From Vitrella brassicaformis CCMP3155 (lineage: Eukaryota; Protista; Chromerida), in NCBI GenBank assembly GCA_001179505.1, contig CDMY01000655.1, positions 1 through 35,966 of the forward strand: 35,966 bases of DNA, written 5' to 3'. Below are positions 1-35,749 of this stretch, piece by piece. Position numbers and translations under genes: made by a program. The notes beneath the pieces are model-generated. The model did no database searches, was not told the DNA's origin, and was given only the letters and a program-made list of their open reading frames with translations. Within the stretch, counting starts at the first letter, position 1. Each line of letters opens with the position of its first letter.

Positions 1-3000
1 GTCGGGGTCGTGTGCCGGCGACCGAGCGCAGGATGGGCCGCCTCGACCCACGGAAAGCTCCGGTGATTCCACTGGTGAGTGCCCTTGAGCTTGGCGAGGC
101 ACCTCTCCACCATGAGGCCGACACCTGACTGGGTCAGCTCCATGATAGCCTCGGACTGGCGAGTCAGACCTAGTGGCACCTCCTCGAGAATGACATGTGC
201 ACTCGTCCCGCCGAACCCGAAGGAGCTGACGCCGCCGACCATGCGGTCCTTGGCGGGCAGGCCAGAGACGAGCGGCACGGGCTCGGTGGGGAAGACCACT
301 GGGAAGCCCTCGGTGTCGATGTACGGGTTGAGTGAGTTGAAGTGGAGATTGGGGGGCGCCTGCTTCATCTGCAGCACGAGTACAGCCTTTAGCACCCCCG
401 CAATGCCCGCGGCTCCCTCCAGATGTCCGATGTTGGTCTTGAGGGCGCCCAGCAGGAGAGGGTGCTCCAAGTTCCGCCCGCCGGCGAACACGGCCTTGAT
501 CGCACCCATCTCGATTGGATCTCCAAGTGAGGTGCCCGAGCCGTGAGACTCCACGAAGTCGATTGATGATGGCTGGAGGCCGGCCTGGTGCAGCGCCGAC
601 CTGATGACCTGCTGCTGGGCTGGACCGCTTGGCACTGTCAGGCTGGCTGTCTTCCCTCCGTGGTTGACAGCTGTGCCTCTCAGACAGGCCAACACGCCGA
701 CCAGGTCGGGTGATGCGTCCGAGAGTTGTTTGAGGATGATGGCAGCCCCACCCTCGCCCCTCACGTAGCCGTTGGCCTTGGCGTCAAACGTCTTGCATCT
801 GGCGTCTGGCGCCATCATGCGTGCCTTGCAGAACGCCATCGTGACTTGTGGATTGAGCATCAGGTTGACGCCTCCCACCAGGGCACCGCGGCACACCCCC
901 ATGCGCATGTCCTTGACCGCCACGTCCATGGCCACCAATGAAGATGAGCATGCCGTGTCGATGGTCATGGAGGGGCCCTTGAGACCGAACACGTACGAGA
1001 TGCGGTTGGAGAGGATTGATGCGGCGACTCCGGTCGCGCTGTAGCTGCTCACGCTGAGGGCAGTCTGGTTGTATACGTCGTACCAGTCAAAGGAGCAGCA
1101 CCCGATGAGCACGGCCATGTCCTGGCCAATGAGCTTCTCGCGGCTGAGGCCCGCGCTGTGGAAGGCCTCGTAGCCCACTTCAAGCATCAACCGCTGCTGG
1201 GGGTCCATGCAGTTGACCTCAGCGGGGCCGATGTTGAAGAAGGCGTTGTCGAACATCTCTGCATCGTCGATGAAGCCTCCCTCTCTGATGTACATCTTGC
1301 CATCCATGTCACGGTCGGCGTCATAGACCTCGTCGATGTTCCAGCGGGTCAGCGGCACCTCCACTATCGCATCATGGCCGCTGCAAAGCAGCTCCCAGAA
1401 GGATGCGGGGGTTGTCACCCCGCCGGGCAGCCGACACGCCGCCCCAGCGATGGCGATCGGCTCGTCTGCCCGGATGCCGCTCGCGAGTGTGGCTTCCTTG
1501 GCGGGCTCCTCGGCGGCCTGGCCCTCGACCTCCCCGACAAGGAAGTCGATGATGTCATTCATAGTTGGCTGGTTGAAGACGAACGTCGGCTCGAGAGTCA
1601 TTGACAGCTCCCTTGACACGTCCTCGGCAAACTCCAGCGCCCTGATGGAGTCGACACCCAGCTTGTGCAGGGGCGTGTCGAAGTCGCATACGTCGGTGTC
1701 CAATATCTTGCCCGCCGACGCCATCACTGCAGACTGGACCCTCCTCTGTGCGGCTGAAAGGCCCTTGCCCTTCCCCTCGCCGTGCCGTGCCGCCTTTTGT
1801 GTCGCAACGGGACCCGTGGGCGGCCTCCCTCGAGCAGCTGCGGACTCCTCCTTCTTGTCCGCATCGGGTTCCCCCACGACCTCATCCCATATGAGACCCG
1901 CCAGGTCCTTGTTGTCAAGAAGAAGCTCACGCGTCTTGGAGCGACGAACCTTGCCTGTTTGATGAATGTGACAATAGATGAATGTGACATTGTCTGTCGG
2001 CATGTGTGTATGTCACATACATGTACCTGCTGTTGTCTTTGGAATGGTTCTTGGTCTGAGCAGCCATATGTGGAAGACGGGAAGTCCGATCTTGACCGAG
2101 ACGGCCTTGTATATCTCGCGGCTGATCCCCTTGTACTCCGTGCTGGTGAACGCCTGCCGCAGCTGCGACAGCCGTCCCCACATCCCCTCCTCCATCTTGA
2201 TCTCGACCGCCAGGCCCAGCCGCTCCTGATCATCCACCTCCAGTGAGAACGCCGCCACGCACCCCTTGCGGACCGACTCGCAGCTCTCTGCGGCCTCCTC
2301 GATGACCTGCGGGAAGTAGTTGCGGCCATTGACGATGATCATGTCCTCAATGCGCCCAGCAATGAAGAGCTCTCCCTTGTAGAAGAAGCCGATGTCACCT
2401 GTCCGCAAGTACAAGGGCTCCGACTTGTCGCCTGTCAGGTAGATGCACTGCCCGTGGAACGACTCCTGCGCCTCGTCGGGCTGGTTGAAATAGCCGCGGG
2501 CCGTGCTGCCAGACATGACCCACACCTCACCACATTGGCCTTCCGGCAGCTCCTTCATCGCCTCGGGGTCAACAATGCGAACTGAACGGAGCAGGCGGTA
2601 CAACTATGCCTATCTGGTGATCGATCTCGTCGGTCAGTGGTGTGTACCGTCTATTCCAGAGAGGGGTACGCCACATCCGACGAGCCGCCGGTACTCGCCC
2701 TCATGACTGCCATCCATGTCAGCTTCATCCACCAACTCAACCACACCCTGCCCACACGCACGCAGATGTGTGCAGCGGATGTCTGCTATGTGTTTGTTCT
2801 TGTACTTGGTTTCTCAATTTCTCGGCGTTGACATTGATGATGAACGGCTCGCTGTCAATGTCTTTGCGGCCCGACACGCACAGGGTGTTCTCGGCCAACC
2901 CATACGCTGGCACAACCTTGCTGCGAGTCACACCCTTACTCGCGAATTTCTGAAATGGACAACAACACAGACCCAAACAAACAGCCATCGTGTTCTCTTT

Positions 3001-4265
3001 CACTGATCATTGGCCGCCTACACCTACTCACGCGCACGTACGCACCTTGACGAATCTATCTATGGTGGCCCCTCTGATTGGCTCTGCCCCGCAGAGGAAG
3101 CCGGACACGTGACTGAGGTCCAGCTCCTCAAACACGCTGTCGGGCATCTTGCGCGTCACCAACTCGAAGGCGAAATTTGGGGCCGCACACGCGCCAGCCT
3201 TGTATCGACTCATGCCTATTCCATGAGAATACAAGCACACACCAACACACCACATAAGCATCAGTCGGTGGTCGGCTCGGGGTTTGTGTAGGCACCTTGT
3301 AGCCACAGGTGCGGCTTCATGACGAAGTCGAGCGGCGACATCTGGAAAACTTCAAATCCAAAAAAGAGGGGCGTGCAGAGGAATCCGATGAGCCCCATGT
3401 CGTGGTAGACGGGCAGCCACGAGAAGCACCGCATGCGGTGACCCCGCACCCGCTTGCTGATCTCGTGACGCTGCATCATTATCTCGCGCATCCTACTGTA
3501 GGGCTGCCCCGTCGCTGTGATGTTGGGGATGGTGGGGTCCTCGATCTTGCTGTCGCAGCCGTAGGCCGTGATGCAGCAGTGGACGTTGTGCAGCAGCGAG
3601 CCGTGCGTCACCATCACGCCCTTAGGCGTCGATGTGGACCCCGACGTGAACTGCAGCAACGCGATGTCGCTCAGGCCGATGCACGGGGGGGTGTAGACGG
3701 TCTCGTGCTTGTCACCATGCCTGTCGGCAGCCGTCCTCTTAAATGCGTCGCTGGTGAGTATCCACTCGATAGATCTCCACCTGGTGTCCTTGCTTAGCGT
3801 GCCCACGACCAGGGCTATCTTTTGGTAGACGGTGTTAGTGAGCGAATAGCGCACCTCAGCGTTCTCGGCGATGTCGCAGAAGCGCGGCACATCGATGTTG
3901 GTGGTGTTGGGGGCGGGGGGATACACGGGCACCGCAACGACGCCCGTGTAAAGGCATGCGAGGAAGGCGAGAATGAAGTCGGTGCCGGGCGGATAGCACA
4001 GGATCACCCGGTCACCCAGCTCCAATCCCAGATCCTCGGTGAGATAGGCGCCGAGCCGCTGCACCTTCCTGAAGAGCTCCCCGTATGTGAACACCTCGGC
4101 CGGCTCCCCATAACCGTCAAGCCACGTGATGGCAGCCGCGTCAGGTATCTCCTTGGCCCACTTGGCGAGCGTCTTGCCGAAGGCCGAGTCGCCATACAGC
4201 TGGTGCAGCTGTGAGAGATCATCAGGGATGGGTCGGCGGGGGATCTCCCAGTTGGAAATGGCCAT
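1..4265 (-). CDS. Type I polyketide synthase, 5' part (FAAL-ACP-KS-DH start), 6 exons, continues beyond left edge
   Basis: Exons 4265-3296, 3215-3046, 2949-2806, 2747-2648, 2581-2027 and 1954-<1 join in phase through GT-AG introns. FAAL motifs: LQFTSGSTSTPKGV, SWLPVYHDMGLIG, YGLAE, LRTGDIG, PKTTAGK. ACP LGVDS. KS DTACSS, HGSGT, KTNIGH, SSFGFGGTSAHVIL. The last exon has no ATG, so it is missing from the ORF track. Confidence 0.95.
185..1465 (-). other. Ketosynthase domain, catalytic triad intact
   Basis: EPIAIAGAACRLPG, MDPQQRLML, GPSMTIDTACSSS (Cys ~948-950), ESHGSGT (His ~543-545), KTNIGHLEGAAG, SSFGFGG. Confidence 0.95.
1555..1730 (-). other. Acyl carrier protein domain
   Basis: FDTPLHKLGVDSIRALEF...TFVFNQPTMNDIIDFL, with the phosphopantetheine Ser in GVDS (~1648-1659). 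Confidence 0.9.
1900..4265 (-). other. Fatty acyl-AMP ligase (FAAL) loading domain
   Basis: Adenylation motifs TSGSTSTPKG, YGLAE, TGD, GRxxD and PKTxxGK. A FAAL-type insert lies after YGLAENTLCVS (...NVNAEKLRNQGVVELV...RLVGCGVP). Confidence 0.88.
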
Positions 4266-4556: not shown

Positions 4557-4704
4557 ACTGACCCCAACTTTTGTGCGATGTGATCGAACTCATCGAACGA
4601 CGTATGAAGATGCCTTCACGCAACACATGAATGCGGTCAGTCACGCGCGTGTCCATGCATCATGAAGTCAGCCATCAACTACTATCTACACCCGCCTCCT
4701 CCTA

Positions 4705-7700
4705 TCACCCATCCGACTTGTCGTGATCGCTTGCCATCATCATGTCCTCATCAGACACGTCACTATGAGCCGCCGCCGGCTGTGCTGCTGCTATCGATGC
4801 CGCCAACAATTCCTTCTCACTCACTCCCTCCCCCTCCTCCCCTGCCTCGGCCTCTGCCTTCGCCCTCGCCCCGCCCCTCGGTGCTGCCGCCTTTGGCTGC
4901 TGCTTGGCTGTCCTCTTCTGCTTGGCCTTGGGCGCTAAGATGGACTGCACGTCAGCCCTGGTACGCGACCGCCCCTGAGCCGAGGGAGTGCTGGTTTGCA
5001 CGAACGGCCGACTGCTCCAGAGATGCGATACCTGACACAACCTGACACACGCCACCCACACAGACAACAGTCATCCGACCCCGCAGCCCTCTCTCCCCCC
5101 TTGTTCAGCGCCTACATGGTTTCCGCTTGACGGCTTTCGTGGTTGGTTTGGTCAGCTCCTCCAGGCTACCGCCCAGCAACACCGACTCGGAGGGCGGCTC
5201 CGTCATCTGGTAGTGTTTCTTGAAGAAGTCCTTGACGTTCTCGGGGAACACCAGACGCGGCCGAGCCCCGACGCCCTCCTGCGCCAGGCGGCTGCCGGGG
5301 TGATCCTCCTTCAAGTTAAGCAAATGCAGCACCTGCACACAGCAAGACGGAGGGAAGCAACGATAGGGCGAGAAGAGATGGTCATCTGCTACGTTGTCTG
5401 CTGACCTGATTCTGTGTATGATGAGTTTGGTGAGGCGGCGTTGCAGACGAACATACGAGTAGCTCAGGAGGAACAGCCCTGCTGCCGTGACTCCAATAGA
5501 CACGACTGCAGCCAGCAGTGAGCTGACAGAACAAGGAGAGAAAACGATGCACACGTGAATGTCCAAGGGTGTTTGCTCAGACGCACCAGCGCTATGACGC
5601 CCTCGACTGCTTCGCCGACGTAGACCACGCATCCCCTCGTCTTGCCCAGCGCTGTCTCGGCCATCTGCCACTCGAGCGGCTTCGGGTTGGCGCGGGCCAG
5701 CACGGCCCGGATCTGCTTGGTGTAGCTGTCGGCTGTCTGCTGGTACGGCAGAAGAGCCGGCTTCTGGTCGTCGTGGCCTCCGTCGAACTGGCTCATCTCC
5801 CAACAATAGACGTCTTCGCCTCGCTGCTCAGACTGAAAATGGACGAAACAACCAACCAAATGAGGAACCCATGGCCGTTTCGGTCGTCATCCGGCTCACC
5901 TGTGGCAGTTTGGTGAGGGATTTCTGTCGAGGAGCTCGGACGCGCGCGTCGTTCGGAATCGGCAGCACATCGACGGCCAGCAGGTTGCTCTTGAGGGCGG
6001 CATCGATCTCCTTGGCGAGAATGTGACCGCTGGGCAGAGGCTGAAACACGGAGAAAATGAATCGTCTCGCCCTCCCTCCCTCCCTCCCTCCCTCTGTGTT
6101 GTGCCGTCTTTGCCTACAATCAGCGCACTATTGTCTTGTTCGTCTGTGATGTCGTGTGTCTGCTCAGGAGGAAACTTGCTGCCATGGCCGTACACCACAC
6201 ACTGCACACACCAGGTACTGTCCGTCGTCGCGGCATTTGGCTGAACCACCACACAAGGCATGGATGGGTGTCTGATTGCGTGCGTGCCCCCCCCCTCCCT
6301 CACATGCCAAGCGAGTTTGCTCGCGTGCCGACTGCTGTTGGTCCATGACGATGAACCCTGTCCTCTTGTCCATCCCCTGGAGAGGGACGGTGCCATCGAC
6401 AGGAGTGGCCAGTGCTGCCATGACCTCCTCCCTCAGGTCGAGCGAAGGCGCGTAGATGATGAAGACGAGCGTCGAACCGATCAGGTTCTCGCAGAGGAAC
6501 GCGAACTTCTTCTCAGAGCCAGGGAAACGGATGCGCGACTCACATACATCTTCCCTCCCACCCCACCTTGTCCAGTCGCTTAAGCGACGACGAGTTGGAC
6601 GGGGCGGGGAGGACCAGAGGCTGGTTGGAAAGGTCTGTGTGCAACACTGCCGGCAGGTGGCCGACGGCACGCATGAGAAGTGTGTGAAGACAGCCGTGCC
6701 ATTGCTCCGCTTCTCGAGCTCCTCCTCGTCGAATATCTTCTCTCTGAGGAGATATGGCGACGGAAGGTGAGTGGTGCCGATGAGCTTGGCGGCTCCTCGG
6801 GCTGCAGCACGCTCACGCGACGCCTCGAACTGACGCTCCTGACGCTTGAAGTCATCGATCGTCGCCTGATGGATCTGGCACACCCAAGAAACAAACGGAG
6901 CCGTGGAGAGAAATACCCATCACCACACGGAAGCCCACAATGCTTCTCAATTCCTCCCCACCTCCAGAATTTCGTCACCGCCTCACGATGCGCTACGTCT
7001 CAGCCGACTCTTGGTCCGATGCAGCCCCCTCGCCCGCTGCCCCTGCGACTGCACTGCGGGTGGTGATCTCCATCAGCTGGGCTCGATCGGTCTCTGCCTG
7101 CCTCTCGGCCTCCGGGAGGTCGCACGCCTCGCTCTTAAAATTCTCAACTGGTGGATGCATCACTACACAACCCAACCCACGAGTGAATAAATGAAGGAAT
7201 GATGATGGATGAATCGTCTGCTGCTCCTCTCTGCTCTCATTTTGTGCGTACGTCCGGGCTCGAGTGTCCCCTCTTTGAGTTTTCGGCCGATCTCTGTGGC
7301 GTGGCCACCTTCGAGGATCGCCGTGAACAGCTGCTGGTACAGGATGCCGAACGATGCGATGAGGTCGGCTGAGAATGTGGCGGCCGCCGCTGGCTCGTCT
7401 TCACATGCCTCCATGGGCTGGTCGCTAGGCTGCTCTTCTACTTACACACCCATGGCTTCATCCTCTACCTCTTGGTACACAGGTGGTGGGTCTTGCTCCC
7501 GCTGGAGATGCGGATGGACACTCAACAAGTCACCGAGTGTCCATCTGCATCTCCTGACACACACAACATGCGCTTGGAGACCATCTTGGTTCCCGCCTTT
7601 TGTGTGCTGTGCGTGTGCGTACCCGTATGTGCGCCTCTGTGTGTCGAATGGCGAGCACACGACCGATCTGCAGGATGATGCCGCCCTTGATGTTCTGCAC

Positions 7701-7890
7701 GCTGCTCACACCCTCTGCAAACGCCATACGAACAATCTGCACACAAACAACATGAATGTACCCAGAGCGCGGTCCTGCAGCTGCTCTCGAGCGGTGAGCT
7801 TTATGTGCCTTTGATGTGGATGGCTTTGAGACGAACGCCTTTGAAAACATGGCAATGCTCACCAATGTCCTGCTCGCCAGGCTCCGCCAA
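4705..7890 (-). CDS. Multi-exon hypothetical protein; 5' end uncertain (may extend to ~8280)
   Basis: A series of coding-like exons between GT-AG introns (e.g. ESRIRFPGSEKKFAFLCENLIGSTLVFIIYAPSLDL; EDVYCWEMSQFDGGHDDQKPALLPY; LHLLNLKEDHPGSRLAQEG). Low-complexity acidic C-terminus with stop at 4705-4707. No family recognised. Confidence 0.7.
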
Positions 7891-8026
7891 ATTTAGACAT
7901 ACAAAACACAAGCAGACAAGACAGCAACTCGAGCCAGTCACTGCAGACACAAGTCTGCATCATGTGCATAGAAAGGTATACGCTGGTGGCAACAGAGACA
8001 TGTAGCGAAACAGAGACACGTTAAGC

Positions 8027-8163
8027 TTTCGTCTGCATCCATCAGACAAACCTCATGTGTGAGTCAATAACGCGCAATACGACACAATGAAAACCAGGGG
8101 GGGGAGGAAGACACAATGCCAGTTCGCGCTGCTGCCGTTCTCTCGCCGCCATCCTCTTCGATC
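8027..8163 (-). repeat. Dispersed ~140-bp repeat, copy 1 (inverted relative to 35584-35749)
   Basis: The reverse complement GATCGAAGAGGATGG...GAACGGCAGCAGCGCGAA..GGCATTGTGTCTTCCTCCCC...TCACACATGA..GTTTGTCTGATGG.TGCAGACGAAA aligns by eye to 35584-35749. Confidence 0.85.
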
Positions 8164-12337: not shown

Positions 12338-12637
12338 NNNNNNNNNNNNNNNNNNNNNNNNNNNNNNNNNNNNNNNNNNNNNNNNNNNNNNNNNNNNNNN
12401 NNNNNNNNNNNNNNNNNNNNNNNNNNNNNNNNNNNNNNNNNNNNNNNNNNNNNNNNNNNNNNNNNNNNNNNNNNNNNNNNNNNNNNNNNNNNNNNNNNNN
12501 NNNNNNNNNNNNNNNNNNNNNNNNNNNNNNNNNNNNNNNNNNNNNNNNNNNNNNNNNNNNNNNNNNNNNNNNNNNNNNNNNNNNNNNNNNNNNNNNNNNN
12601 NNNNNNNNNNNNNNNNNNNNNNNNNNNNNNNNNNNNN
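12338..12637. other. Assembly gap (300 N) flanked by poly-G
   Basis: Exactly 300 N with G-runs on both sides. Confidence 0.99.
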
Positions 12638-22028: not shown

Positions 22029-22328
22029 NNNNNNNNNNNNNNNNNNNNNNNNNNNNNNNNNNNNNNNNNNNNNNNNNNNNNNNNNNNNNNNNNNNNNNNN
22101 NNNNNNNNNNNNNNNNNNNNNNNNNNNNNNNNNNNNNNNNNNNNNNNNNNNNNNNNNNNNNNNNNNNNNNNNNNNNNNNNNNNNNNNNNNNNNNNNNNNN
22201 NNNNNNNNNNNNNNNNNNNNNNNNNNNNNNNNNNNNNNNNNNNNNNNNNNNNNNNNNNNNNNNNNNNNNNNNNNNNNNNNNNNNNNNNNNNNNNNNNNNN
22301 NNNNNNNNNNNNNNNNNNNNNNNNNNNN
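22029..22328. other. Assembly gap (300 N) flanked by (GTT)n and poly-G
   Basis: Exactly 300 N. Confidence 0.99.
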
Positions 22329-25940: not shown

Positions 25941-26240
25941 NNNNNNNNNNNNNNNNNNNNNNNNNNNNNNNNNNNNNNNNNNNNNNNNNNNNNNNNNNNN
26001 NNNNNNNNNNNNNNNNNNNNNNNNNNNNNNNNNNNNNNNNNNNNNNNNNNNNNNNNNNNNNNNNNNNNNNNNNNNNNNNNNNNNNNNNNNNNNNNNNNNN
26101 NNNNNNNNNNNNNNNNNNNNNNNNNNNNNNNNNNNNNNNNNNNNNNNNNNNNNNNNNNNNNNNNNNNNNNNNNNNNNNNNNNNNNNNNNNNNNNNNNNNN
26201 NNNNNNNNNNNNNNNNNNNNNNNNNNNNNNNNNNNNNNNN
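25941..26240. other. Assembly gap (300 N)
   Basis: Exactly 300 N. Confidence 0.99.
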
Positions 26241-28982: not shown

Positions 28983-29282
28983 NNNNNNNNNNNNNNNNNN
29001 NNNNNNNNNNNNNNNNNNNNNNNNNNNNNNNNNNNNNNNNNNNNNNNNNNNNNNNNNNNNNNNNNNNNNNNNNNNNNNNNNNNNNNNNNNNNNNNNNNNN
29101 NNNNNNNNNNNNNNNNNNNNNNNNNNNNNNNNNNNNNNNNNNNNNNNNNNNNNNNNNNNNNNNNNNNNNNNNNNNNNNNNNNNNNNNNNNNNNNNNNNNN
29201 NNNNNNNNNNNNNNNNNNNNNNNNNNNNNNNNNNNNNNNNNNNNNNNNNNNNNNNNNNNNNNNNNNNNNNNNNNNNNNNNNN
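28983..29282. other. Assembly gap (300 N), probably containing the NOG1 3' end
   Basis: Exactly 300 N; the NOG1 frame (GGHRKRTRS) runs into it. Confidence 0.95.
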
Positions 29283-35583: not shown

Positions 35584-35749
35584 GATCGAAGAGGATGGTG
35601 GCGAGCTTTTGCGGAGCTCGCGGTGAGTGAACGGCAGCAGCGCGAATCGGCATTGTGTCTTCCTCCCCCCCCCTTGATTTTCACTGTGTCGTATTGAGTG
35701 TTACGTATTGAGTCACACATGAATGTTTGTCTGATGGGTGCAGACGAAA
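35584..35749 (+). repeat. Dispersed repeat, copy 2 (with ~22-nt insertion)
   Basis: Aligns to the reverse complement of 8027-8163. Confidence 0.85.

What the first reader, a model, noticed from the sequence alone, without database searches (positions are those of the whole stretch)
1..4265. FAAL-primed PKS whose first module appears AT-less (KS directly followed by a DH-like start)
Seen: after the KS end (SSFGFGGTSAHVILEE) only ~35 aa precede WNHRSFPW...HPALGRR. Established: this W.R..(Y/F)W / HPLLG signature normally closes the post-AT linker and opens a DH domain, and a cis-AT module needs a ~300-aa AT there. Apicomplexan FAS1/PKS modules are typically KS-AT-DH-ER-KR-ACP. Inference: this is a trans-AT-like megasynthase primed with a fatty acid by a FAAL-ACP loading unit, in an intron-bearing protist genome.
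Basis: partly seen in the sequence, partly recalled or inferred. Interest (0 to 1): 0.75.

Follow-up and report, generated by a model that had tools for sequence, protein, structure and literature searches.

The report
Algal polyketide synthase module lacking acyltransferase
The front end of a giant lipid/polyketide synthase gene of the alga Vitrella brassicaformis really lacks the acyltransferase in its first module, lost at a clean recombination joint, but acyltransferase-poor synthases are already described in these algae, so this is a well-documented example, not a new kind of enzyme.

Summary
On the minus strand of window 1-4265 lies a six-exon gene: FAAL, ACP, a ketosynthase (KS) with its Cys-His-His motifs intact, then 36 residues and the W..R.FPW / HPALG start of a dehydratase (DH). 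There is no room for an acyltransferase (AT).

The contig ends at window base 1, so the window holds only about 25 residues of the DH. A 96% identical copy on contig C496 continues as DH (catalytic HxxxGxxxxP present), ER, KR, methyltransferase and ACP. No AT appears in the next 10 kb.

The genome is Vitrella brassicaformis CCMP3155.

The "trans-AT lineage" reading is only partly supported:
- The closest KS paralogs (76% aa) are FAAL-ACP-KS-AT-DH.
- The window keeps their pre-AT linker, joined at about base 126 to a post-AT linker plus DH that is 94-95% identical in DNA to a different module family. This is a recombination scar.
- The assembly holds about 14 KS-DH and over 20 KS-AT junctions, and AT state changes at least 6 times on the KS tree.
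- No free-standing cytosolic AT was found.

Published work already notes AT-lacking modules in chromerid synthases (PMC7464705) and AT displacement in algae (PMC4661987). This scan reported the same design before on other DNA of this genome. Verdict: new member of a known kind, modest interest.

The parts
3296..4265 (-). FAAL exon 1 (start ATG at 4265; AMP-binding N-terminal part)
   Evidence: PF00501 1.5e-38. The best PDB matches are FAALs (7R7E 2e-37, 3KXW, FadD23/28/32). GT donor after 3296.
3046..3215 (-). FAAL exon 2
   Evidence: In-frame GT-AG joins 3296>3215 (80-nt intron) and 3046>2949 (96-nt intron). The peptide runs ...KPHLWLQG/MSRYKAGACAAPNFAFEL.... Boundaries are inferred, not supported by transcripts.
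2806..2949 (-). FAAL exon 3
   Evidence: Frame and GT-AG scan; the peptide contains ...PAYGLAENTL.... Boundaries are inferred.
2648..2747 (-). FAAL exon 4
   Evidence: Frame and GT-AG scan; tblastn of P0010 covers ...GCGVPLSGID.
2027..2581 (-). FAAL exon 5 (end of the N-terminal part, hinge and C-terminal subdomain)
   Evidence: PF00501 end of profile. Collinear with the FAAL-ACP-KS proteins P0009 and P0010. The join 2027>1954 gives ...IPKTTAGKVRRSK....
1539..1724 (-). Loading ACP (GVDS phosphopantetheine site), inside exon 6 (1-1954)
   Evidence: PF00550 3.1e-09, residues 97-158 of the ORF at 3-2012.
177..1472 (-). Ketosynthase with Cys (DTACSSS), His (HGSGT) and His (NIGH) all present
   Evidence: PF00109 and PF02801; motifs read; CurL is the best single-KS PDB match at 8e-138.
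127..176 (-). Remnant of the pre-AT linker (...TRQSEAIMELTQS)
   Evidence: DNA homology to the KS-AT paralog C378a runs through window 127-698 and stops 8 nt before that paralog's AT. C378a reads RSESEAIKELTPS|TAFLFTGQG.
78..126 (-). Recombination joint and remnant of the post-AT linker (GVGLMVERCLAKLKGT)
   Evidence: Window 1-125 is 94-95% identical in DNA to the segments that follow the AT on C27 and C508 (93% on C858). The three-way view of the joint shows only a few bases of microhomology.
1..77 (-). First ~25 residues of the DH (HQWNHRSFPWVEAAHPALGRRHTTP), cut by the contig end
   Evidence: tblastn to the C27 DH, 96% over 25 aa. The C496 copy continues into a DH with an intact motif set.

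Best explanation
Window 1-4265 (minus strand) is the 5' end of a modular type I polyketide/fatty-acid-like megasynthase gene of Vitrella brassicaformis. A FAAL adenylates a fatty acid and puts it on the fused ACP. A catalytically intact KS takes it up for one Claisen extension. The module then goes straight into DH (followed by ER and KR in the sister copy), with no integrated AT. The AT is missing because of an in-frame, domain-boundary recombination. The head of the gene (FAAL-ACP-KS plus the pre-AT linker) comes from a starter-module family that otherwise reads KS-AT-DH. At about window base 126 it is joined to the post-AT linker and DH of a different, recently amplified module family. Shown here: the anatomy, the joint, its presence in two diverged copies, and the mixture of cis-AT and AT-less modules across the genome. 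Inferred: the module's extender ACP is malonylated in trans. The most likely donor is an integrated AT of another module of the same or a sister megasynthase, as must happen in the other Vitrella lines that carry one AT for several modules.
For: Domain calls. The KS-to-HPALG distance is 63 aa, against 382-426 aa in the KS-AT paralogs measured. The C496 copy (96% DNA identity) has the same joint, a complete DH motif set, psiKR-ER-KR, MT and ACP, and no AT in 10 kb. The flanks of C655 and C496 stop matching about 1 kb upstream of the start codon, so these are two loci or two very divergent haplotypes. Between the two copies dN/dS is 0.41 overall and 0.32 in the KS, meaning 43 non-synonymous changes where neutrality predicts about 100. 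Chimeric origin: the KS and pre-AT linker match C378a/C506/C731b at 77-82% DNA identity up to window 127. Window 1-125 matches C27 and C508 at 94-95% (C858 93%). The DHs of the KS-nearest paralogs are only 32-38% aa identical to this DH type. Census: about 14 KS-DH and over 20 KS-AT junctions. On C685 one strand carries FAAL, KS-DH, KS-AT-DH, KS-DH, KS-DH in order. On the KS tree AT state changes at least 6 times, and the AU test rejects a single clade of AT-less starter KSs (p = 2e-6). The literature agrees on the general design (PMC7464705, PMC4661987).
Against: The window's own copy is cut 125 nt after the joint, inside a segment repeated at 93-95% elsewhere, so nothing downstream is known for this copy. 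C496 is a scaffold with 300-N gaps, so the link from its DH to ER-KR-MT-ACP rests on scaffolding. The C496 KR reads GQSNHAAAN where six other Vitrella KRs have Tyr, which hints that this copy may be decaying. A dN/dS of 0.3-0.5 shows only moderate constraint. No transcript evidence was available here, and no annotated protein spanning the joint was found in the length range searched. The trans-acting AT was not identified. The KS tree is built within one genome, where gene conversion between modules can distort it, and the AU group was named after the tree had been seen.
Confidence: 0.72

Rival explanations
1. It belongs to a true trans-AT PKS lineage, like bacterial trans-AT PKSs or the chlorophyte and haptophyte ones. 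In that case the whole assembly line is AT-less and is served by a dedicated free-standing AT enzyme.
For: The first module is AT-less and no AT lies in the 10 kb assembled downstream on C496. A C-methyltransferase domain is present, as is common in trans-AT systems (PMC4661987). Direct KS-short linker-DH junctions also occur in other protists: Gregarina, Chrysoparadoxa, and an unnamed eukaryote protein, eukprot UC1.
Against: The nearest KSs are cis-AT. PDB ranking favours cis-AT KSs. Both flanks of an excised AT are still recognisable. The candidate discrete ATs proved to be KS-AT fragments (C418; P0121). The only stand-alone AT is a FabD with a signal peptide, listed as plastid-located in PMC7464705. 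Other lines of the genome mix AT-bearing and AT-less modules.
Confidence: 0.12
2. The AT-less joint is an assembly artefact: a chimeric contig made from repeated PKS modules.
For: The contig ends 125 nt beyond the joint, inside a 93-95% repeat. The PKS loci of this assembly are full of 300-N gaps and collapsed or duplicated modules.
Against: The two sequence types share only a few bases at the joint, far too few for a k-mer-based mis-join. The joint is in frame. Two copies that differ at about 4% of bases, including within the linker itself (6 changed codons of 59), carry the same joint. On C496 the sequence runs on without a gap for about 940 nt past the joint.
Confidence: 0.06
3. It is a decaying or non-functional duplicate: the AT loss killed the module and the gene is drifting.
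For: The KR of the C496 copy has His in place of the catalytic Tyr. dN/dS is 0.3-0.5, not below 0.1. Truncated PKS remnants exist in this genome according to earlier scan notes.
Against: All exons are open with GT-AG introns. The KS Cys-His-His, the ACP Ser and the DH His/Asp motifs are intact. Non-synonymous changes are less than half the neutral expectation. Thirteen or so other AT-less modules sit inside long open frames.
Confidence: 0.1

Closest known systems
Vitrella paralogs FAAL-ACP-KS-AT-DH on contigs C378, C506, C997 and C731 (for example the annotated partial protein P0124, 1220 aa)
   Same: Same loading unit: FAAL exon 1 is 73-81% aa identical. The KS is 76-78% aa identical. The pre-AT linker is the same.
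   Different: They keep an AT of about 290 aa and carry a different DH type, 32-38% aa identical to the one here.
Chromerid FAS-I-like / PKS multi-modular enzymes (Tomcala et al. 2020, PMC7464705)
   Same: Same organism and gene family. [quoted passage not shown]
   Different: In the passages read, the paper gives no junction-level analysis, no loading-unit description and no evidence on how the ATs were lost.
Algal trans-AT multimodular PKSs (Shelest et al. 2015, PMC4661987)
   Same: Multimodular eukaryotic PKSs without integrated ATs, for which the paper proposes 'displacement of AT domains' from cis-AT ancestors.
   Different: Those lines are almost wholly AT-less and their KSs tend to form separate clades. 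Here AT-bearing and AT-less modules are interleaved in one KS clade and on the same contigs. Chromerids were not in that study (the word 'Chromera' occurs 0 times).
Cyanobacterial olefin synthase (Ols) of Picosynechococcus PCC 7002, FAAL domain structure 7R7E
   Same: Its FAAL domain is the best solved match of the window's FAAL (2e-37; identity of 7R7E from PMC11837247). From my own knowledge, Ols starts FAAL-ACP-KS-AT.
   Different: It is bacterial, keeps its AT, and ends in a sulfotransferase-thioesterase release unit.
Cryptosporidium parvum CpFAS1 / CpPKS1
   Same: An alveolate megasynthase that elongates a pre-formed fatty acid (PMC7464705). From my own knowledge it is primed by an acyl-ligase-ACP loading unit and has fully reducing modules.
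   Different: From my own knowledge every module has its own AT. This was not tested here.
Bacterial trans-AT PKS ketosynthases (PksJ 4NA1, PksL 5ERF, 'AT-less PKS' 4QYR)
   Same: A KS not followed by an AT.
   Different: They score lower against this KS (about 327-335 bits) than cis-AT KSs do (CurL 464). From my own knowledge they carry a flanking subdomain of about 100 aa after the KS, where this module has 36 residues.

Membership tests
Type I modular PKS / FAS-like megasynthase | KS of the PF00109/PF02801 family with a Cys-His-His catalytic triad | tested here: met
   (287 and 135 bits). The motifs DTACSSS, HGSGT and NIGH were read.
Type I modular PKS / FAS-like megasynthase | Carrier protein and processing domains fused in one reading frame with the KS | tested here: met
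   ACP-KS-DH start lie in one ORF in the window. DH-psiKR-ER-KR-MT-ACP follow on the C496 copy, across scaffold gaps.
Fatty acyl-AMP ligase (FAAL) | Adenylate-forming fold whose closest characterised relatives are FAALs and not acyl-CoA ligases | tested here: met
   PF00501. PDB ranking: Ols FAAL 2e-37, LpFAAL 1e-31, FadD23 3e-24, FadD28 and FadD32, against the acyl-CoA ligase FadD13 at 7e-06. Exon 1 only was searched.
Fatty acyl-AMP ligase (FAAL) | FAAL-specific insertion that blocks CoA use | not tested
   This needs the joined exons aligned to FAAL and FACL structures. The joined protein was not built or searched.
Fatty acyl-AMP ligase (FAAL) | Delivers to a cognate ACP (fused or adjacent) | tested here: met
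   An ACP (PF00550) follows the FAAL C-terminus in exon 6. The transfer itself is inferred.
PKS dehydratase (double hotdog) | N-terminal HPLL-type motif, HxxxGxxxxP catalytic His, YGPxF and DxxxQ/H motifs | tested here: met
   The window holds HPALG only. The 96% copy on C496 has all four motifs, with PF14765 at 2.5e-19.
trans-AT PKS | Module lacks an integrated AT | tested here: met
   63 aa from SFGFGG to HPALG, and no PF00698 hit on C655.
trans-AT PKS | A free-standing AT enzyme serves the line | tested here: inconclusive
   All 39 PF00698 hits were inspected by position. Those followed up are KS-linked, apart from the signal-peptide FabD on C525. A six-frame search without gene models cannot exclude a discrete AT.
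trans-AT PKS | KS groups with trans-AT KSs and not with cis-AT KSs | tested here: not met
   Sister KSs in the genome are KS-AT. PDB scores favour cis-AT KSs. No broad reference phylogeny was built.
trans-AT PKS | The whole assembly line is AT-less | not testable with these tools
   Both copies run off their contigs. Other FAAL-primed lines in the genome are mosaics.

The most novel reading that the evidence does not exclude
Vitrella carries a natural series of matched starter modules: the same FAAL-ACP-KS head with and without an AT. ATs would have been excised several times independently by in-frame, microhomology-level recombination between unlike modules exactly at the AT's short linkers. 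The resulting lines would work by sharing one integrated AT among several modules. That would be a living intermediate of the 'AT displacement' route proposed for algal trans-AT PKSs, and a ready-made test bed for AT sharing.
Probability: 0.45. Interest if true: 0.45.

Novelty: new member of a known kind. Interest (0 to 1): 0.3.

Why it matters
AT-poor megasynthases in chromerids and algae are already on record, so the architecture itself is not new. The added value is the resolution. Here the AT loss can be read base by base as a joint between two module families. AT-bearing and AT-less sisters of the same starter module sit in one genome. This gives a concrete pair of constructs for asking how an AT-less module is supplied with malonyl units in a eukaryote. 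It also supports the view that module duplication came before AT loss in protist PKS evolution.

Tried and rejected
- Leftward extension of the contig is impossible: the window is C655:1-35966.
The domain order on C685 therefore rests on hit coordinates only.
- I looked for a discrete trans-acting AT. The tandem AT hits on C418 are preceded by a KS end and interrupted by N gaps. The AT-only annotated protein P0121 (461 aa) starts inside a KS and ends in a DH start, so it is a gene-model fragment. The AT on C525 is a FabD with a signal peptide.
- I looked for an annotated or transcript-derived protein spanning the AT-less joint, using a word search focused on the joint with candidates of 430-1368 aa. 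None from Vitrella appeared.
- The idea that C655 and C496 are plain haplotigs is not supported, because homology stops about 1 kb upstream of the start codon. A haplotype with a large rearrangement is not excluded.
- A 75-nt repeat upstream of the gene was tested as a tRNA and against Rfam. Both were negative.
- The FAAL exons were searched separately by reference. The joined spliced protein was not built or searched.
- The large representative-protein search and structure prediction were not used. The family scans left nothing open that they would settle.
Full report
**What is there.** The window is contig C655 of a 72.7-Mb, 1064-contig assembly, and window base 1 is the first base of the contig. 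Proteins from the same contigs are named Vitrella brassicaformis CCMP3155 in public records.

The gene lies on the minus strand. A frame and GT-AG scan gives six exons: 4265-3296, 3215-3046, 2949-2806, 2747-2648, 2581-2027 and 1954-1. Collinear FAAL-ACP-KS proteins from other assemblies support the order of the last three. The exon borders are inferred, not backed by transcripts.

Pfam finds the following:
- AMP-binding in exons 1 and 5.
- A phosphopantetheine-binding ACP.
- Both halves of a ketosynthase.
- Only the first third of the KS C-terminal extension profile, below its cut-off.

The FAAL exons were searched one by one, by reference. Exon 1 matches solved FAALs best: the FAAL domain of the Picosynechococcus PCC 7002 PKS (7R7E, identified in PMC11837247), LpFAAL, FadD23, FadD28 and FadD32. 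The acyl-CoA ligase FadD13 ranks far below them.

**The observation.** After ...SSFGFGGTSAHVILEE come 36 residues, then WNHRSFPWVEAAHPALGRRHTTP, and then the contig ends. No AT profile hit lies on C655. The KS Cys, His and His motifs and the ACP serine are present. The coordinates run on the minus strand. And only about 25 residues of the DH are in the window.

**What follows the joint.** A copy on contig C496 is 96% identical over window 1-1500. There the frame goes on into DHVVLG, crosses an 86-nt GT-AG intron, and continues VPLMPGAG. The spliced reading is an exact HxxxGxxxxP motif, and YGPRF and HPAILDGALQ follow. Pfam then calls PS-DH, an ER (ADH_N and ADH_zinc_N), a KR, a C-methyltransferase and, by motif, an ACP. 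No AT appears up to the contig end 10 kb later. C496 has four 300-N gaps in this stretch, so the order beyond the DH depends on scaffolding.

Upstream, C655 and C496 match only to about window 5336 (86% identity) and not beyond. They are therefore two loci, or at least two strongly diverged haplotypes. Between them dN/dS is 0.41 over 650 codons and 0.32 in the KS.

**How the AT was lost.** In the same genome the closest KSs (76-78% aa) belong to FAAL-ACP-KS-AT-DH genes on C378, C506, C997 and C731.
- The C378 copy reads ...RSESEAIKELTPS then TAFLFTGQG, the start of its AT. The window reads ...TRQSEAIMELTQS then GVGLMVERCLAKLKGTHQW.
- That second half is the post-AT linker of a different module family on C27, C508, C858 and C231. 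There it reads ...DDQDGVSLTVATCLAKLKGTHQWKHRSFPW and directly follows an AT.
- At DNA level, homology to C378a covers window 127-698. Homology to C27 and C508 covers window 1-125 at 94-95% (C858 93%).
- On C496 the two tracts meet within 4 nt.
- The aligned view shows only a few shared bases at the joint.
- The DHs of the KS-nearest paralogs are only 32-38% identical to this DH type.

The first module is therefore a chimera: the head of one starter-module family, the tail of another module family, and the AT dropped exactly between its two short linkers. A single unequal recombination explains this most simply. A deletion followed by gene conversion of the DH is not excluded.

The contig breaks inside the 125-nt repeat, which explains why the assembler stopped there.

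**Genome context.** Profile searches give 54 KS-C, 39 AT and 40 DH hits. Reading the junctions gives about 14 KS-to-DH joints with 38-63 residues between SFGFGG and HPxL (a few have a variant NPF start). More than 20 KS-AT joints were read; some are near-identical copies and a few have degenerate AT motifs.

FAAL-primed lines occur in two forms:
- With an AT in the first module: C997, C378, C731, C506, C791 and C244.
- Without one: C655/C496, C236, C685, C357 and C830.

On C685 one strand carries, in order, FAAL, KS-DH, KS-AT-DH, KS-DH and KS-DH (coordinates). I could not fetch the whole contig to confirm that this is one gene.

A maximum-likelihood tree of 31 KS domains puts the window's KS in a well-supported (100/99) clade of ten KSs. 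For at least nine of the ten, a FAAL hit lies upstream on the same contig. Five of the ten are followed by an AT and five are not (C357's AT-less junction read). AT state needs at least six changes on the tree. An AU test rejects putting the five AT-less starter KSs into one clade (p = 2e-6). The group was named after the tree had been seen, and gene conversion among modules may distort such a tree.

**Comparison with known systems.** Against solved structures the KS scores:
- 464 bits with cis-AT CurL.
- 366-396 with PikA1 and DEBS.
- About 327-335 with single trans-AT KSs (PksJ, PksL, 'AT-less PKS').

The top entry, 7ZMA, sums two KSs in one chain. Direct KS-short linker-DH joints also occur in Gregarina, Chrysoparadoxa and an unnamed eukaryote protein (eukprot UC1).

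Tomcala et al. [quoted passage not shown] They add that two V. brassicaformis enzymes carry MT domains (PMC7464705). Shelest et al. 2015 describe algal multimodular PKSs that lack integrated ATs, and they propose displacement of ATs from cis-AT ancestors (PMC4661987).

Earlier notes of this scan report the same design on other contigs of this genome. My tests agree with them.

**Mechanism.** Shown here: the domain order, the intact catalytic motifs, the absence of an AT, the joint, and its occurrence in two copies.

Inferred: the FAAL loads a fatty acyl chain on the ACP without CoA. The KS extends it with a malonyl unit that some other AT must place on the module's ACP. DH, ER and KR then reduce the product.

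The most economical donor is an integrated AT of another module. I base this on three points:
- Such ATs are abundant in the genome.
- Other lines carry one AT for several modules.
- No cytosolic discrete AT turned up. The only stand-alone AT is a FabD with a signal peptide, listed as plastid-located in PMC7464705.

One warning sign is that the C496 KR has His where six other Vitrella KRs have the catalytic Tyr. That copy may be impaired.

**Verdict.** The trans-AT-lineage interpretation is only partly supported. The feature is a clear, well-resolved example of a design already recorded for chromerids and algae.

Noticed in passing
L005:3726-3770 (C496 about 58726-58770): The KR after the AT-less module on the C496 copy reads GQSNHAAAN. 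The catalytic Tyr is replaced by His, whereas six other Vitrella KRs read N-Y-[AS]-A-A-N.
   Followed up: partly
L009, L011, L021, L032 and others (KS-AT junctions of the paralogs): In the AT-bearing modules, only 37-63 residues separate SFGFGG from the AT's GQGSQ motif. From my own knowledge this gap is about 100 or more in canonical cis-AT PKS and animal FAS. The usual KS-AT linker domain seems largely absent in this alveolate family, and Chromera and Lankesteria hits look alike.
   Followed up: partly
L005:3726-9999 (C496 58726-65000): After the KR comes about 570 aa with no Pfam hit, including an ER-like GroES motif. A C-methyltransferase, a Rossmann-like stretch and an ACP follow. The block AYRDGMLLAPRE...MT is present about three times between N gaps, so it is either a tandem repeat or an assembly duplication.
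   Followed up: no
window 7830-8149, also 35620-35749 (-): A dispersed repeat of about 320 nt is found at 76-93% identity on more than 20 other contigs.
   Followed up: no
window 4567-4641: A 75-nt element about 300 nt upstream of the PKS start codon recurs at 92-95% identity on contigs C747, C620 and C152. It is not a tRNA (ARAGORN) and has no Rfam match.
   Followed up: partly
window 4612-5336 (-) and C496 49906-50615: The duplicated block shared by C655 and C496 extends about 1 kb upstream of the PKS start. It includes a short conserved minus-strand ORF (...KEDHPGSRLA.EGVGAR...ENVKDFF.KHYQMTEPPSESVLLGGSLEEL...).
   Followed up: no
window 12338-12637, 22029-22328, 25941-26240, 28983-29282: There are four scaffold gaps of exactly 300 N in the window.
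   Followed up: no
L017 (C791a) and L041 (C58): Two integrated ATs have degenerate active-site motifs: GGEGHAQ on C791a and no GQGSQ on C58. They are possibly dead ATs.
   Followed up: no
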